Shown: piece after piece, positions 5,875 through 10,115 of the stretch
Layout: the number at the start of each line of letters is the position of its first letter
Numbering within the stretch: the first letter of the stretch is position 1
Assembly (NCBI RefSeq): GCF_902459465.1
Contig: NC_047076.1
Span: 2,294,001 to 2,358,000 of the forward strand
Direction: 5' to 3'
Origin: Asterias rubens
Lineage: Eukaryota
Length of the DNA: 64,000 nucleotides
Position numbers and translations under genes: made by a program
The notes under the pieces: model-generated
What the model was told of the DNA's origin: nothing
What the model saw: the letters and a program-made list of their open reading frames with translations, nothing else
Databases searched by the model: none

Positions 5875-8800
5875 TCAATTTGTGCATTTTGCATTGATTA
5901 TATTCACACCATGTTCCTGGTACTCTTTCCTGCTCACCGCCAACTCGGGAAAATTCTCCTCCGAGGCGAAGAAGGAGCCGCCCAGCCAAGCCGACCACGC
6001 CCTTGTGGGTGCAGTCAACACTTTCACATTAGTCTCCGCCCCGGCCAGGGCTTGTATTTCCTTCTTCAGGCGTTGGGGAAGGTGGCTGGTACAACTCGAA
6101 CCACCGGCTAACACGATGTTTTCGTAGAGGGCGCCCCTTGCGGACTCGTCGCATTGTTGGATGCTTTCGTGCGCCATTTTGTGTACTCCTTTGTCAGTTT
6201 CCGTACCACCGAGAAGCGAGCTTCGGAAGAGGGGTTCGGCGCATCGGAATCGCTCGGTTCCCAGTGAAATCACCTACGAAGTTGTACATCATTTTAACAA
6301 TTTTCATTTGTTATGAAATAAATTAGTATCCAATATACTCAATGAGATATTTCTTGTGATAAACAAATATAAAAGTGGTGGCAAGAAACGAAAATCTTTC
6401 ACGAGGAAAAGAAGTGAAAACACATGTTGCATGACATCGATATCAAAAAAGAAATGAATTAAAACGCTCATTGTAGAGCGATTAACTCAAAACGGAAAAT
6501 ACATTTTTTTGTGGTCTTGTCAAAATATGACATTTCATATGTAAATTAAATTTTGTGGTCTTATCAAATATGACATTTCATATATGTAAATTTGTGGTCT
6601 TATTAAATATAACATTTCAAATACAAATGTGCGGTCTTAGACGAGTTTTTGTTCCTACAAATTCTGTAATGTTTCTAATCTAATTAAATTAACCAGACTC
6701 TACTATTATTATAAGGGGGGTGTTTCTTACCTGTCCGCCAGGCAGGGTGTATTCCACGGGTTTACATCCCGACAGGTTGAACTCCCCCTCGTAGTCCCAC
6801 GCGATGTAGCTGTGCTTCTCCTTTATGGCACTGATAGTCTCGCGGTCGGCTGAGGAGATTTGCCGAGAACAAACGAGATTTCAATACAATGCGTACACAC
6901 GGGTGTAATAGAGATCAGTGTGCAGAACCATGTTGGGCTAGACTAGAGTCTGGGTGTGAGACCGCCACATGCCTCAATGTTGTCGTTTTTATGTTTGTTT
7001 TGTCATTTTTACCTGGACGTACATCATGAAGGAATACGAACATGAATACATGTACTTGCATAGAACATGCATAGAGCAAGGGCACATATTATAAGGCAGT
7101 TATGCAAGAAACAGACACAAGTTCAAAACATCAACAAACTTACTTATTGAGACGCCATCTTGTTCATTCAACAGCTTCGCCAGGTAGTCTGTCATCTGCC
7201 GACCGGCTACAACATCCATCGTGACGATACCTGACGTCACAACAACGCCCTCAACGACAGGAACCGAACTGACCATGCTGTCTCCAATATCGAGAACCAA
7301 TCCCGTGGTTTTCTCGATGCTTTGGAGGGCGAGGTGCGGCTGGAGTGCAACGTAGAATGACGGGGCGTTGTGGGTCTCAAATATGCTCTGAAGAGGAAAC
7401 AGTCAAACTTGGCAACAATTACGCCTCAAAAGCTCAAATTAGTCCAGCCCCTGGGCCTTTTTGAGATATGGCGGACACTCTAGAATTGCACTGTTGGGTT
7501 TGGGTGTAGGCGTAGATACAGATACAGATTTAATCCAAACCTAAACACTGGGTGCGTTCGATAAGCTTCCCTGGGTCTACCCCGCGGTGCTCACTCAGAT
7601 GAGCCCCTGACTCAAGAACTAAATGAACGACCACTCACCGCTCTCGTAGTGACGTCATGCACCTGGGGCCAGCCCCCCAAAGCGACCCACTCCACAATCA
7701 GGGCACTGGGGGCTGACCCGGGTGAGCCCCCGGAATGACATCAAAGCTATTCGAACGCATCGGGGGAAGACCGGGGTCGACCCAGGGAATCTAAACGAAC
7801 GCACCCACTGTGGTGTTTCAAACAAACTTCAAAATGGCTGGTGGTCGTACACTTGAAAAGAAGTAGCCACACCCTTAAGATCCTGTAAAGGATTCCTGAG
7901 ATTCCAGGCGAACAATGCAGACATAATAGAGGGTAAAACCCATAGAGAAAAGGCCGTGACGGTCCTTTCTCTTGTGTTACGCCTTGCCCCACTATGAGCA
8001 CAACATTGTCCAATCCTCTCGAAGGCAATTACTGCCCAAATTATTATATGGTTGGTGTGAACATAGAGCAAGAAACTGTTCCTTGCTCTATGGTGTGAAC
8101 GTGCATCAATGTTGAATCCACTGTGGTTACGGCATTCAACTTTAGGCCTTTCGTATACTTGATTCTAGATATTGCAATACCCTTAAAACAATTTTTTAAC
8201 AAGTCAAATTTACCAAATATCTTGATGAAAATTAATTGACATAATTAAAAGATGTAAATCATTGGATAAACATATAAAGTGGTGAGTGGATCAGTGAGCA
8301 AACAATAAATGCAAATAAATGAATATATAAATAAACAAATAAATTGATTATTTAATAAATAAATATAAATAAAACTCGTGAAATTTGTACTGGCTCTCAA
8401 AATTACTTTAACTCCTAGAGTTAGACACTAATACACAAGGAATATACAAGTTGAACAGGGCTGTCATGACAACATTATAAAAACTGTCATCACAAAATAA
8501 GGAGACCGTCAACATAGGGCTATAGATTGGGTAATGCGCCGGTGTCAGATGCAATTGTGTCCGCCATGCAATACTGTCCGCTCCGGACACTTTTGCATGA
8601 CAATCGTGTCCGGAGCTATGCAAAAACCGTCCGGTGGAGAACATGACTGTACATGAGCGTGCATGCACTGAACCTTTATATGCAGCATGAATAATCACGT
8701 ATTTTATGATTGCAGCGAATACCCAACGGCCGAACATTTCCCATGTCATCATGACATGCACTTAGCTTGTAAACAAATGGCTAACGTATTCCGGCGTCGA

Positions 8801-10115
8801 CCAATGGCGTTTAATTCACCGCAAGGACGGTTTTGCACGGGGGCGGACGCAACTGCATATGCAAATGTGTCCGGGCGGACACACTGCATTATGCAGCAGC
8901 GTTCGGGCGGACACGATTGCATATGCAAAACCGTCCGGCGGACATTGTTGCATATGCAATAATGTCCTCCGGATAGTATTGCACAGAGGACATAATTGCA
9001 TGCGACACCGGCACGTTCTTGGGGAGGTCCTTGGTTCGAGTCCCACAGTAATAAATTTGTCTTTATTAAAGATGTGTACACAACCAGGCCCCTACCAACA
9101 TACAACTATAATAGTTTTAAAGACACTGGACACTGGTGGTAATTGTCAGAGACCAGTCTTCCCACTTAGTGTATCTCGACAAAATGCATACAAATAACAA
9201 ACCTGATGTGAAAATACTTCTTTCTCAAAACGTTACTTCAGACGGAGCCGTTTCTCGCAATGTTTTATACTATCAACAGCTCTCCACTGATCGTTACCAA
9301 GTAAAGCTTTATGCTAATAATTATTTTCCGTAATTACCAATAGTTTTCAATGCCTTTATAATCATACAAAAGATAATCATAACAACAAAAACAAAAGCAT
9401 TTATTTATGATTTTGACTCCAACCTCTGCCATCTTGGCCCTGTTCTTTGTTTTCATCTCAGCCTCGACGGGTCCATCCGTCAACATCACCGGTACCTCAG
9501 CAATCGAATCACACCCCAGGACATCGACAAAGCAGAATTCCCATATACGATTCATGTCGTCCATGTCCGTGATGCTGTATTTATCCAGCGGGTAACTCAG
9601 GGAGAGAGTCGCCCGGTTCTCGAACGCCTCTTCCCCCACACAGATGGTGTCCTGCCCCGCACCCTGTCGGAATAATCAGTTGTAATTTTAGCACAAAATG
9701 GACGTGTATTAACACAACCAACAGTTAAAGTCACCTGGAAATAGAATTTTGTTTCTTTCAAACAGGTTCTAGAATATTTACGAAAACAAAAACTTGTTAT
9801 GTTTTGTTGAATTGAATAACTTTATTGACTCAAGTCCCAATCCCGTGCCATTGCCACAGAAAACAATTGGTTTCTGATGCTCTATATTCCTCAACCTGTT
9901 CCGCGCGGGACACGAGAACGGGACTTGAATCAAGTCTAGCATTCATCTGCGTAATCCAATGGTGTTCACCATAATCCCACTGAATCTAACGTCCTTACCG
10001 CGTTTGGCCTTCCAACAACAGTGTGGAAAGTATCCTCGGGAACATCACGACCAGAAAGCCCCACCCTGGTCAGAAACGACCCGCTGTCAATCACAATGGT
10101 CGGAGTTCGGTTCAT
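5875..10115 (-). CDS. Highly divergent actin-like protein (372 aa). Exons 9999-10115, 9424-9663, 7144-7387, 6731-6849, 5875-6273
   Basis: Exons of 117+240+244+119+399 = 1119 nt splice in frame with no internal stop. Actin-fold motifs: VIDSGS, VGRP, YVALQ, DIGD, GTERFRCAEPLF, VLAGG, SAWLGGS. The exon 2 donor (GTTGGA) is weak but falls exactly at actin position 121/122. Confidence 0.9.
7550..7806. mobile_element. MITE, PIF/Harbinger-like
   Basis: TIR GGGTGCGTTCG...CGAACGCACCC with a 3-bp direct repeat ACT on both sides; lies in intron 2 of the actin-like gene. Confidence 0.7.
8537..9013. mobile_element. TIR MITE with subterminal repeats, copy A
   Basis: Termini CGCCGGTGTCAGATGCAATTGTGTCC and GGACATAATTGCATGCGACACCGGCA; internal TGCA...GTCCG repeats; reverse-complement homolog at 12272-12647. 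No TSD visible. Confidence 0.8.
9121..9355. mobile_element. Kolobok-type MITE, internally deleted
   Basis: TTAA|AGACACTGGACAC...CAATGCCT|TTAT; internal sequence shared with the other family copies. Confidence 0.7.

What the first reader, a model, noticed from the sequence alone, without database searches (positions are those of the whole stretch)
5875..10115. Intact, extremely divergent actin paralog nested inside an actin cluster: candidate non-canonical actin/ARP
Seen: five exons splice into an uninterrupted 372-aa actin-fold ORF, roughly one-third identical to its neighbours by eye. It keeps their intron positions and phases (41/42 phase 0, 121/122 phase 0, 204 phase 1) and probably a 5'UTR intron, and has an extra intron at 246/247 (GGQ|VIS). 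Residue changes in standard actin numbering: the D-loop loses about 5 residues including V43-M44-V45, with M47 to A ([12 protein letters not shown] becomes PNAGAGQ); H73 to K; H161 to S; Q137 retained; C-terminus RKCF becomes AKCTN. Established: the D-loop hydrophobics make the longitudinal filament contact, H73 is the SETD3 methylation site, M44/M47 are MICAL targets, and Q137/H161 position the lytic water. Inference: this is a local duplicate of the cytoplasmic actin that neofunctionalised into a nucleotide-binding, poorly polymerising protein, perhaps analogous to testis ARPs. It may be an undescribed lineage-specific actin class.
Basis: partly seen in the sequence, partly recalled or inferred. 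Interest (0 to 1): 0.82.

Follow-up and report, generated by a model that had tools for sequence, protein, structure and literature searches.

The report
Sea-star-specific divergent actin paralog
Between two ordinary actin genes lies an intact, transcribed and selectively maintained gene for a very unusual actin-like protein, found so far only in sea stars, that has lost most of the residues actin uses to build filaments; it is probably a sea-star counterpart of the lineage-specific "non-canonical" actin-related proteins of flies and mammals.

Summary
Five GT-AG exons on the minus strand (10115-5875) splice into an uninterrupted 372-aa actin-fold protein. It is 41-42% identical to the two flanking canonical actins, not about one third.

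Transcript contigs from three studies show all four coding junctions, and one shows a 5'UTR intron.

The protein is identical to the automatic NCBI model XP_033639454.1, "actin-like [Asterias rubens]".

- **Orthologs:** they have the same five exons, including the extra intron at 246/247. They sit in the same actin - divergent gene - actin arrangement in Asterias amurensis, Patiria miniata and Acanthaster planci.
- **Selection:** dN/dS is 0.16-0.22, against 0.008-0.02 for the neighbouring actins. This is not a pseudogene.
- **Range:** a profile of the sea-star proteins scores 741-757 bits on them and at most 344 bits on anything else among 5.8 billion proteins.
- **ARP classes:** it matches none. 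Identity is 18-30% to Arp3, 4, 5, 6, 7, 8, 9 and 10/11, and 34-39% to fungal Arp1.

Where it branches in the actin tree is unresolved. Shared introns and conserved position support a local actin origin.

That it binds nucleotide but does not form F-actin is inferred from residues only. The expressing tissue is unknown. I found no paper on it.

The parts
10837..10975 (-). Upstream 5'UTR exon. Its 5' end is not defined.
   Evidence: An X8 transcript contig joins 10837-10975 to 10138-9998 (table 8). The donor AGAG|GTGAGT lies at 10837|10836.
10139..10836 (-). 5'UTR intron, used in some transcripts. The X1 contig reads through it to 10517.
   Evidence: The acceptor AG lies at 10140-10139.
9999..10138 (-). 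Exon holding the last 23 nt of the 5'UTR and coding exon 1 (ATG at 10115; 39 codons; P1 loop DSGSFLTR).
   Evidence: Pfam Actin 27.5 bits.
9664..9998 (-). Intron 1, at actin position 41/42, phase 0. Shared with both neighbouring actin genes.
   Evidence: Joint seen in X1, X8, X10 and X12.
9424..9663 (-). Coding exon 2 (80 codons). Holds the shortened D-loop and H73K/G74Y.
7388..9423 (-). Intron 2, at position 121/122, phase 0, shared with the neighbours. Weak donor GTTGGA. Holds two inverted-repeat elements.
   Evidence: Joint in X1, X8 and X10. Repeats.
7144..7387 (-). Coding exon 3. Holds Q137, the altered cleft residues Y143Q and G146E, the P2 loop DIGDSM, H161S and the W-loop VVEGVVVT.
   Evidence: Pfam Actin 59.9 bits.
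6850..7143 (-). Intron 3, at codon 204, phase 1. Shared with the neighbours.
   Evidence: Joint in X1, X8, X10 and X12.
6731..6849 (-). Coding exon 4.
6274..6730 (-). Intron 4, at position 246/247, phase 0. Specific to this gene family and present in all three genomic orthologs.
   Evidence: Joint in X1, X8 and X10.
5875..6273 (-). Coding exon 5 with the stop codon (132 codons; K336A; C-terminus AKCTN).
   Evidence: Pfam Actin 128.8 bits.
4492..5874 (-). 3'UTR of at least about 1.4 kb. The lower bound is worked out from the length of the X1 contig. It ends about 350 nt from the stop codon of the convergent actin gene ACT_A.
   Evidence: The X1 contig is 2932 nt, and its positions 1152-1974 lie on 6271-5450.
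1779..4143 (+). Flanking canonical actin gene ACT_A (4 exons, 376 aa), convergent with the divergent gene.
15248..17374 (-). Flanking canonical actin gene ACT_B (4 exons, 376 aa), upstream of the divergent gene and in the same orientation.

Best explanation
This is a functional protein-coding gene for a sea-star-specific, fast-evolving actin-fold protein. It is best classed as a non-canonical (orphan) actin-related protein.

**Origin (inferred).** It most likely arose from a conventional actin gene by tandem duplication inside the actin cluster, before forcipulatid and valvatid sea stars split. After that it either diverged in an early burst or has an older origin.

**Shown.** The gene is spliced and transcribed. 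It is conserved in structure and position in four sea-star species. It is under purifying selection roughly 10-25 times weaker than on the neighbouring actins.

**Mechanism (inferred from residues).**
- The protein keeps the actin fold and the core of the nucleotide cleft (D11, G13, Q137, D154, G156, D157, K213, E214, G301, G302). It probably still binds ATP or ADP.
- H161S, G158S, V159M, an aromatic residue at position 15, K336A and loss of R210 and F306 predict slow or no hydrolysis and altered nucleotide handling.
- Both faces of the longitudinal F-actin contact are rebuilt. The D-loop is deleted or replaced. The cleft residues Y143, G146, Y166 and Y169 are replaced. Three residues are deleted at 202-204, and F375 is lost.
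- The acidic N-terminus and the H73 methylation site are gone.

It therefore most likely does not enter normal F-actin. It would act as a monomer or as a subunit of another complex, or possibly form a polymer of its own, in a cell type not yet identified.
For: - **Gene model and splicing:**. The protein is identical to XP_033639454.1.
- **Orthologs:** all have five exons with the extra 246/247 intron. They lie in a conserved actin(+) - divergent(+) - actin(-) arrangement in A. amurensis, P. miniata and A. planci.
- **A third expressing species:** an RNA-like contig lacks exactly the same introns.
- **Selection:** NG86 dN/dS is 0.16-0.22 in all ten pairs, including unsaturated ones (dS 0.09, 0.39, 0.88). 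Flanking actins give 0.008-0.02.
- **Within-family conservation:** of 375 aligned positions, 106 are invariant in the family and equal to actin, and 79 are invariant but different from actin.
- **Range:** the family profile scores 741-757 bits on sea-star proteins and at most 344 bits on anything else. In the exhaustive HMMER search with exon 5, one cluster has E 2e-65 and the next best hit is 41% identical.
- **Fold:** the AlphaFold model of the A. amurensis ortholog has pLDDT 94.3. It superposes on actin at 1.2 A over 340 residues with 41% identity.
- **Residue changes:**
Against: - There is no biochemical evidence at all. Nucleotide binding, lack of hydrolysis and lack of polymerisation are predictions from residues.
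- Very divergent actins and Arp1 do polymerise, so loss of canonical contacts does not prove a monomeric life.
- Trees leave the clade's position in the actin family unresolved.
- The long stem (0.75-1.17 changes per site, against about 0.37 from the crown node to the tips) could mean an origin much older than sea stars, with loss elsewhere.
- In one tree a divergent Diadema actin groups with the clade at 91/71 support.
- The tissue of expression is unknown.
Confidence: 0.6

Rival explanations
1. It is still a filament-forming actin isoform. It would either co-polymerise with conventional actin as a specialised isoform, or build its own filament with a different geometry, as Arp1 and some protist actins do.
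For: The fold and length are those of actin, with no insertions. Parts of the inter-subunit surfaces remain, for example 241-247 (LPDGQV) and the general shape of the 262-274 plug. Purifying selection acts on all four subdomains alike. Arp1, at about 52% identity to actin, forms a filament; that is established knowledge about dynactin.
Against: The hydrophobic residues of the D-loop are absent in all five sequences. Their receiving cleft is altered as well (Y143Q/I, G146E/D, Y166V, Y169V/A, L349, F375). The 200-208 contact has a three-residue deletion. At 41% identity it is further from actin than Arp1 is.
Confidence: 0.22
2. It is an old echinoderm-wide, or older, actin-like gene, not a sea-star invention. 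It would have been retained in Asteroidea and lost or diverged beyond recognition in other classes. The divergent Diadema actin would be its remote co-ortholog.
For: The stem branch is two to three times longer than the crown depth. Diadema P0007 groups with the clade at 91/71 in one tree. It shares several derived states with the clade: a basic residue at 73, S155I, A260P, RLKKE and EHG (visible).
Against: P0007 is 52% identical to actin and only 39% to this protein. It lacks the 246/247 intron. The grouping disappears in the other trees. Many of the shared states recur in unrelated divergent actins, and long branches attract each other. No non-asteroid protein scores above conventional actins with the family profile.
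Confidence: 0.13
3. It is a member of a canonical ARP class (Arp1-Arp10) that gene naming has missed.
For: Identity to actin (41%) lies in the range of Arp2 and Arp3. The AU test cannot reject a grouping with the single fungal Arp1 used as outgroup (p 0.49).
Against: - The 60 best PDB sequence matches are all conventional actins at 275-281 bits, for the whole protein and for single exons.
- Structure-based identities are actin 41%, Arp3 30%, Arp4/BAF53 24-26%, Arp5 22-24%, Arp6 20-23%, Arp8 18-19%, Arp10/11 22% and Arp7/9 19%.
- Mean identity to ten fungal Arp1s is 34-39%, while those Arp1s are 75-93% identical to each other.
- At columns that tell actin from Arp1, it has the actin state 15 times and the Arp1 state 7 times.
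- It has no class-specific insertions.
- It shares three of three intron positions with actin genes.
- It is restricted to sea stars.

Arp2 could not be tested directly.
Confidence: 0.02
4. It is a decaying or functionless duplicate that happens to be still intact.
For: It evolves far faster than actin. Many catalytic and contact residues are lost.
Against: The reading frame is intact in five species that span the forcipulatid-valvatid split. dN/dS is 0.16-0.22 throughout. Seventy-nine positions are invariant in the family yet differ from actin. Exon structure and splice sites are conserved. Correctly spliced mRNA is present in several studies.
Confidence: 0.03

Closest known systems
Non-canonical (orphan) actin-related proteins: Drosophila Arp53D and the obscura-group testis Arps, and the mammalian testis Arps cited in the same paper (PMC8291977)
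   Same: It has an actin fold. It belongs to no canonical ARP class. It is lineage-restricted and evolves much faster than actin, yet has been retained for a long time. The acidic actin N-terminus is lost or replaced.
   Different: - It is far more diverged: 41% identity to actin, against 64-68% for the Arp53D and ActL2 sequences recovered here.
- It has no N-terminal extension.
- It is an intron-bearing tandem duplicate sitting inside the actin cluster.
- It is much older. The forcipulatid-valvatid split is roughly 200 My or more by my own knowledge, not tested here; Arp53D is put at 65 My (PMC8291977).
- Male-germline expression, the usual hallmark, is untested.
Conventional cytoplasmic actin (the two neighbours ACT_A and ACT_B)
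   Same: Length (372 against 376 aa), fold, three intron positions and phases, and genomic cluster. Q137, D11, D154, D157, K213/E214 and G301/G302 are retained.
   Different: 41-42% identity. The D-loop hydrophobic residues, H73, H161, G15, K336, Y143, Y166, Y169, F375 and the acidic N-terminus are lost. There is an extra intron at 246/247. dN/dS is 10-25 times higher.
Arp1 (centractin), the canonical ARP closest to actin
   Same: Similar size, no large insertions, and K18R in the P1 loop.
   Different: Arp1 keeps G15, H73, H161, Y143, G146 and Y166/Y169-like residues, and is 52% identical to actin. This protein is 34-39% identical to fungal Arp1. Arp1 is known from across eukaryotes, whereas this protein was found only in sea stars.
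Other divergent actin paralogs of echinoderms found here: Diadema 'actin, non-muscle 6.2-like' (P0007), and the second divergent actin next to this gene in Patiria and Acanthaster (XP_022096717.1)
   Same: They are lineage-specific divergent actins in or near actin clusters and keep the ancestral three introns.
   Different: They are much less diverged (52% and 64-67% identity to actin), only 38-40% identical to this protein, and lack the 246/247 intron.
Divergent intron-containing actin HdA6 of the sponge Halisarca dujardini (PMC12146513)
   Same: A single divergent, intron-bearing actin paralog beside conserved actins, on a long branch with poorly resolved position. That paper estimated Ka/Ks to test whether the divergence is gene decay, the same test as here.
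   Different: A different phylum and an independent origin.

Membership tests
Actin superfamily fold (Pfam PF00022) | Significant match to the Actin profile over the whole length, and an actin fold with four subdomains. | tested here: met
   PF00022 scores 291.6 bits at E 1e-86. The AlphaFold model has pLDDT 94.3. Z is 47.5 and rmsd 1.2 A against actin 4pl7_A.
Conventional (filament-forming) actin | Very high sequence conservation. The flanking actins are 98-99% identical between sea-star orders. | tested here: not met
   41-42% identity to the neighbours. The sea-star orthologs are only 58-60% identical to each other. The conventional actins compared differ at about 4 nonsynonymous sites between Asterias and Acanthaster.
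Conventional (filament-forming) actin | Hydrophobic D-loop (V43-M47) and its receiving cleft (Y143, G146, Y166, Y169, F375). | tested here: not met
   The D-loop is shortened by five residues in Asterias and replaced by polar residues in Patiria and Acanthaster. The cleft changes are Y143Q/I, G146E/D, Y166V, Y169V/A and F375T/K.
Conventional (filament-forming) actin | Catalytic and sensor residues Q137, H161 and H73, and the glycine-rich P1 and P2 loops. | tested here: not met
   Q137 is kept. H161S, H73K, G74Y, G15F/Y, G158S and V159M are invariant in all five sequences.
Conventional (filament-forming) actin | Polymerises into F-actin. | not testable with these tools
   This needs purified protein or live imaging.
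Canonical ARPs (Arp1-Arp10) | Orthology to one of the classes known across eukaryotes: closer to that class than to actin, with the class-specific insertions. | tested here: not met
   Structure-based identity is 18-30% to Arp3, 4, 5, 6, 7/9, 8 and 10/11, against 41% to actin. Identity to fungal Arp1 is 34-39%. The 60 best PDB sequence matches are all actin. The protein has 372 aa and no insertions. Arp2 was not tested directly, and the trees are unresolved.
Non-canonical (orphan) Arps | Restricted to one lineage. | tested here: met
   Only sea-star proteins (Asterias rubens, A. amurensis, one unnamed assembly, Patiria, Acanthaster) score above conventional actins: 741-757 against at most 344 bits. 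Limit: genomes of other echinoderm classes could not be searched at the DNA level.
Non-canonical (orphan) Arps | Rapid evolution compared with actin, but retained under selection. | tested here: met
   dN/dS is 0.16-0.22 against 0.008-0.02. The reading frame is intact in all five species.
Non-canonical (orphan) Arps | Derived from actin or an Arp by duplication. | tested here: inconclusive
   Three of three intron positions and phases are shared with the neighbouring actins, and the position inside the actin cluster is conserved. Sequence trees do not resolve the origin.
Non-canonical (orphan) Arps | Expression mainly in the male germline. This is usual for the group but not strictly defining. 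| not testable with these tools
   Transcripts are present in runs of several studies. Samples are coded, so tissue is unknown.

The most novel reading that the evidence does not exclude
Sea stars carry a new, old (at least as old as crown Asteroidea) class of actin-related protein. It was born by tandem duplication inside the actin cluster, not by retroposition.

Its nucleotide pocket is rebuilt (aromatic residue at position 15, H161S, K336A), and both filament faces are replaced.

It would act as a non-hydrolysing, non-F-actin regulator or as the subunit of a new polymer. Candidate settings are the actin-driven events for which starfish gametes are a model system: the oocyte F-actin shell and meshwork, or the sperm acrosomal process.
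Probability: 0.15. Interest if true: 0.8.

Novelty: new member of a known kind. Interest (0 to 1): 0.5.

Why it matters
Lineage-specific actin-related proteins have been studied almost only in Drosophila and mammals, where they are young and mostly retrogene-like. This one adds an echinoderm example with unusual properties:
- it is much older and much more diverged;
- it still carries introns;
- it has stayed fixed between two conventional actin genes across sea-star orders.

That makes it a clean natural case of how far an actin duplicate can drift while remaining under selection.

Sea-star oocytes, eggs and sperm are classic systems for actin cell biology. An expressed actin-fold protein that lacks the residues used for filament contacts, SETD3 methylation and processing of the acidic N-terminus could be an overlooked player there. 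It could also be a source of confusion in proteomics and in gene naming, where it appears as 'actin-like', 'actin-5-like' or 'actin, clone 302-like'.

Knock-in tools for Patiria miniata now exist (bioRxiv 10.64898/2026.08.05.742869), so its localisation and loss-of-function phenotype can be tested directly.

Tried and rejected
- **Pseudogene.** Rejected by dN/dS of 0.16-0.22 in all pairs and by intact frames in five species.
- **Canonical ARP.** Rejected for Arp3, 4, 5, 6, 7/9, 8 and 10/11 by structure-based identities, and for Arp1 by identity and diagnostic columns. I could not obtain Arp2 or animal Arp1 sequences. The last protein search, seeded with a fungal centractin, returned only fungal Arp1s and actin fusions.
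- **Fold searches for ARP identities.** The AlphaFold DB searches gave only conventional actins, many with masked names, or fusion proteins. They did not discriminate. The Atlas search gave only generic actin clusters.
- **Phylogenetic placement.** Three trees give a 100%-supported sea-star clade on a very long stem but no supported position. A weak grouping with a foraminiferan actin (identified) is probably long-branch attraction, and a weak grouping with Diadema P0007 may be too. AU tests reject neither alternative.
- **The longer high-scoring hits to exon 5** (P0002-P0006). These are tandem-actin fusions or actins with extensions from a firefly, an amoeba, a fungus and a metagenome, plus a 257-aa plant actin fragment. 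None is a relative of this family.
- **P0288, labelled 'Centractin'.** Its actin domains are 58-64% identical to actin and it was not usable as an Arp1 reference.
- **Resemblance of the aromatic residue at position 15 to nuclear ARPs.** This is from my memory only. Exon 1 alone still matches conventional actins best, so I treat it as possible convergence, untested.
- **Literature.** Searches for a description of this gene, including by accession number, found nothing.
- **Tissue of expression.** It could not be determined, because run, sample and study names are coded.

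
Full report
**1. The observation**

The stretch 5875-10115 carries, on the minus strand, five open segments with actin-like translations. 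I joined them at the only in-frame GT..AG sites. The result is exons 10115-9999, 9663-9424, 7387-7144, 6849-6731 and 6273-5875. They total 1119 nt and encode 372 aa without interruption.

Two canonical actin genes flank it:
- ACT_A at 1779-4143 on the plus strand
- ACT_B at 17374-15248 on the minus strand

Each has four exons and encodes 376 aa. The two proteins agree at 370 of 376 positions.

The divergent protein is 41-42% identical to them over 363 aligned positions.

Its first three introns interrupt the alignment at the same places and phases as the neighbours' three introns: 41/42 phase 0, 121/122 phase 0, and codon 204 phase 1. The fourth, at 246/247 (GGQ|VIS), is extra.

All the listed residue changes are present:
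- a D-loop five residues shorter (PNAGAGQ in place of [12 protein letters not shown])
- H73K
- H161S
- Q137 kept
- C-terminus AKCTN

**2. It is transcribed and spliced as predicted**

Twelve public runs hold parts of the stretch. I laid the contigs of four of them, from four studies, on 5450-11400.

In three of the runs (X1, X8, X10) transcript contigs carry all four coding joints at exactly the predicted bases. X12 shows two of them.

- The X1 contig is 2932 nt long. It runs from 10517 through the spliced coding sequence and on past 5450. By arithmetic that gives a 3'UTR of about 1.4 kb, ending near 4492. That is only about 350 nt from the stop codon of the convergent ACT_A.
- An X8 contig joins 10138 to 10837-10975. 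The skipped part starts with a consensus donor, AGAG|GTGAGT, and ends in AG.

**3. Identity and relatives**

An exhaustive HMMER search with exon 5 against 1.84 billion cluster representatives gave one outstanding hit: P0001, E 2e-65, 85% identity. The next best was 41% identical.

Word-seeded searches with P0001 and with a profile of four orthologs found only these relatives:

| Source | Accession / id | Name given by the source |
|---|---|---|
| Asterias amurensis | XP_071803192.1 | actin-5-like |
| Asterias rubens | XP_033639454.1 | actin-like |
| Patiria miniata | XP_038044647.1 | actin, clone 302-like |
| Acanthaster planci | XP_022096761.1 | actin-like |
| Assembly GCA_014845345.1 (species not named) | P0001 | none |

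With the profile, the four sequences it was built from score 741-757 bits. The next best of 5.8 billion proteins is a conventional actin at 344 bits. A fungal centractin scores 273 bits.

The A. rubens protein is letter for letter my spliced translation.

Pairwise identity to the window protein:

| Ortholog | Identity |
|---|---|
| A. amurensis | 97% |
| P0001 | 84% |
| Patiria | 60% |
| Acanthaster | 58% |

**4. Conserved gene structure and position**

I mapped the orthologous proteins back on their loci. This shows the same five exons and the same four intron positions and phases in A. amurensis, Patiria and Acanthaster, including the extra intron at GQ|VI.

In all three the gene lies between an upstream actin-family gene in the same orientation and a downstream convergent one. 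The window has the same arrangement.

The contig holding P0001 (L004) is colinear with the window. However, it lacks exactly the four coding introns of this gene and the three introns of the convergent actin, while keeping 5'UTR-intron and intergenic sequence. It looks like an assembly of two overlapping convergent transcripts. If so, it is further evidence of expression in another species.

**5. Selection**

Nei-Gojobori dN/dS is 0.16-0.22 in all ten pairwise comparisons. The three least saturated orthologous pairs are:

| Pair | dS | dN/dS |
|---|---|---|
| window / A. amurensis | 0.086 | 0.18 |
| window / P0001 | 0.39 | 0.21 |
| Patiria / Acanthaster | 0.88 | 0.16 |

No sixth of the alignment exceeds 0.42. 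The flanking actins give 0.008-0.02.

Of 375 aligned positions, 106 are invariant in the family and equal to actin. Another 79 are invariant in the family but differ from actin, and 190 vary. Divergence from actin is spread evenly over the four subdomains.

This is a gene under its own, weaker, constraint. It is not a decaying copy.

**6. Not a canonical ARP**

- Against PDB sequences, the 60 best matches are all conventional actins. This holds for the whole A. amurensis protein (275-281 bits), for exon 5 and for exon 1.
- The AlphaFold model (pLDDT 94.3) was aligned to one representative of each 40%-identity PDB cluster:

| Class | Structure-based identity |
|---|---|
| Actin (Z 47.5, rmsd 1.2 A) | 41% |
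| Arp3 | 30% |
| Arp4 / BAF53 | 24-26% |
| Arp5 | 22-24% |
| Arp6 | 20-23% |
| Arp10/11 | 22% |
| Arp7/9 | 19% |
| Arp8 | 18-19% |

- Arp1 and Arp2 fall into the actin cluster at that threshold. For Arp1 I used ten fungal sequences. Mean identity to them is 34-39%, against 40-41% to actins. Actin and Arp1 are 52% identical to each other.
- At 59 columns that separate actin from Arp1, the family has the actin state 15 times, the Arp1 state 7 times and neither 37 times.
- Arp2 could not be tested directly.
- The protein has no insertions. A family confined to sea stars also cannot be the ortholog of a class known from across eukaryotes.

**7. Where it branches is not resolved**

In three maximum-likelihood trees the five sequences form a clade with full support, on a stem of 0.75-1.17 changes per site. 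The rest of the actin tree is a star.

- One weak neighbour is a foraminiferan actin. That is probably long-branch attraction.
- Another is a divergent Diadema actin, at 91/71 support. That protein is 52% identical to actin and 39% to this one, and it lacks the 246/247 intron.
- AU tests reject neither a clade with the sea-star actins (p 0.07) nor a pairing with Arp1 (p 0.49).

The case for an origin by local duplication of an actin gene therefore rests on two things: the three shared introns and the conserved position inside the cluster. The stem is two to three times as long as the path from the crown node to the tips. That means either a burst of change after duplication or an origin older than sea stars.

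**8. What the residues suggest (inference)**

*Kept in all five sequences:* D11, G13, Q137, D154, G156, K213, E214, G301 and G302. D157 is E in Patiria.

*Changed in all five:*
- G15 to F or Y
- K18R
- G158S, V159M, H161S
- H73K, G74Y
- K336A
- R210 and F306 replaced
- Y143 to Q or I
- G146 to E or D
- Y166V
- Y169 to V or A
- three residues deleted at 202-204
- F375 lost
- the acidic N-terminus replaced by neutral or basic residues

The D-loop is shortened in Asterias. In Patiria and Acanthaster it keeps roughly its length but is polar.

From established knowledge of actin:
- the D-loop inserts into the cleft lined by Y143, Y169 and F375 of the next subunit;
- Q137 and H161 position the attacking water;
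- H73 is the SETD3 site. A change at G74 is reported to disrupt that methylation (abstract of PMC12421705, seen).

These roles point to a protein that probably still binds nucleotide, hydrolyses it poorly if at all, and cannot make the normal longitudinal contacts on either face. None of the other divergent actins, the Arp53D and ActL2 sequences or the Arp1 aligned here shares this combination.

**9. Comparison with what is known**

The best fit is the group called non-canonical Arps: lineage-restricted, fast-evolving actin-fold proteins outside the canonical classes, known from Drosophila and mammals and usually testis-biased (PMC8291977).

This gene meets three of the group's features: restriction to one lineage, fast evolution, and retention under selection. 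It differs in being much more diverged and much older, and in being an intron-bearing tandem duplicate. Its tissue of expression is unknown. A divergent intron-bearing actin in a sponge is a parallel case (PMC12146513).

I found no paper on this sea-star gene.

**10. Verdict**

The feature is real and correctly described. It is a functional gene, already predicted by automatic annotation but apparently uncharacterised. It is a new member of a known kind. Interest is moderate. It would be higher if the protein proves to act in the actin-driven events of starfish gametes, or if it forms a polymer of its own.

Noticed in passing
L002:2698-5321 (Patiria miniata) and L003:2277-5100 (Acanthaster planci, XP_022096717.1 = P0083): In the two valvatid sea stars the gene just upstream of the ortholog is itself a second divergent actin. 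It is 64-67% identical to conventional actin, the two copies are 57% identical to each other, and it keeps the usual three introns. In Asterias that place is held by a conventional actin. The cluster seems to breed divergent paralogs.
   Followed up: partly
L005:10001-13469 (Diadema antillarum, XP_071487913.1 = P0007): A sea-urchin divergent actin. It is 52% identical to actin, carries H73R, H161Q and K336E, and keeps the ancestral three introns but not the 246/247 one. It groups weakly (91/71) with the sea-star family in one tree only.
   Followed up: partly
L004:1-5297 (GCA_014845345.1, contig JACSEG010001083.1): A contig filed in a genome assembly is colinear with window 1779-10933. It lacks precisely all four coding introns of the divergent gene and all three introns of the convergent actin, while keeping 5'UTR-intron and intergenic sequence. 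It looks like RNA-derived sequence: two overlapping convergent transcripts assembled together.
   Followed up: partly
That is about 350 nt from the stop codon of the convergent ACT_A, so the two mRNAs may overlap tail to tail.
   Followed up: no
window 7545-7811 and 8533-9017 (intron 2); related sequence near 12300-12490: Two inverted-repeat elements sit in the intron: 40-nt arms at 88% complementarity, and 48-nt arms at 81% around a cluster of short palindromic units. Summed contig depth there is in the thousands to hundreds of thousands in all four runs, so they are highly repeated, probably MITE-like transposons.
   Followed up: partly
window 10241: The X1 transcript contig carries a 24-nt insertion and a C>T change (at 10244) compared with the window, in the unspliced 5'UTR form. 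This is probably an allele.
   Followed up: no
window 1779-4143 against 15248-17374: The two flanking actin genes differ at only dS 0.095. That is about the same as the distance of this locus between the window and A. amurensis (0.02-0.09). Yet each has its own one-to-one ortholog in A. amurensis with 0-1 amino-acid differences. Gene conversion between the cluster's actins is possible.
   Followed up: no
window 54174-54446 (+) and 59670-59990 (-): Two open segments catch the eye. One has a helicase-like motif (LFVDESHCVSKW, reminiscent of RecQ-type DEAH boxes). The other has an ankyrin-repeat-like stretch. Both are judged by eye from the ORF list only.
   Followed up: no
window about 49780-49950: A run of N (an assembly gap or masked stretch) shows up as X in an ORF translation. 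I left it untouched.
   Followed up: no
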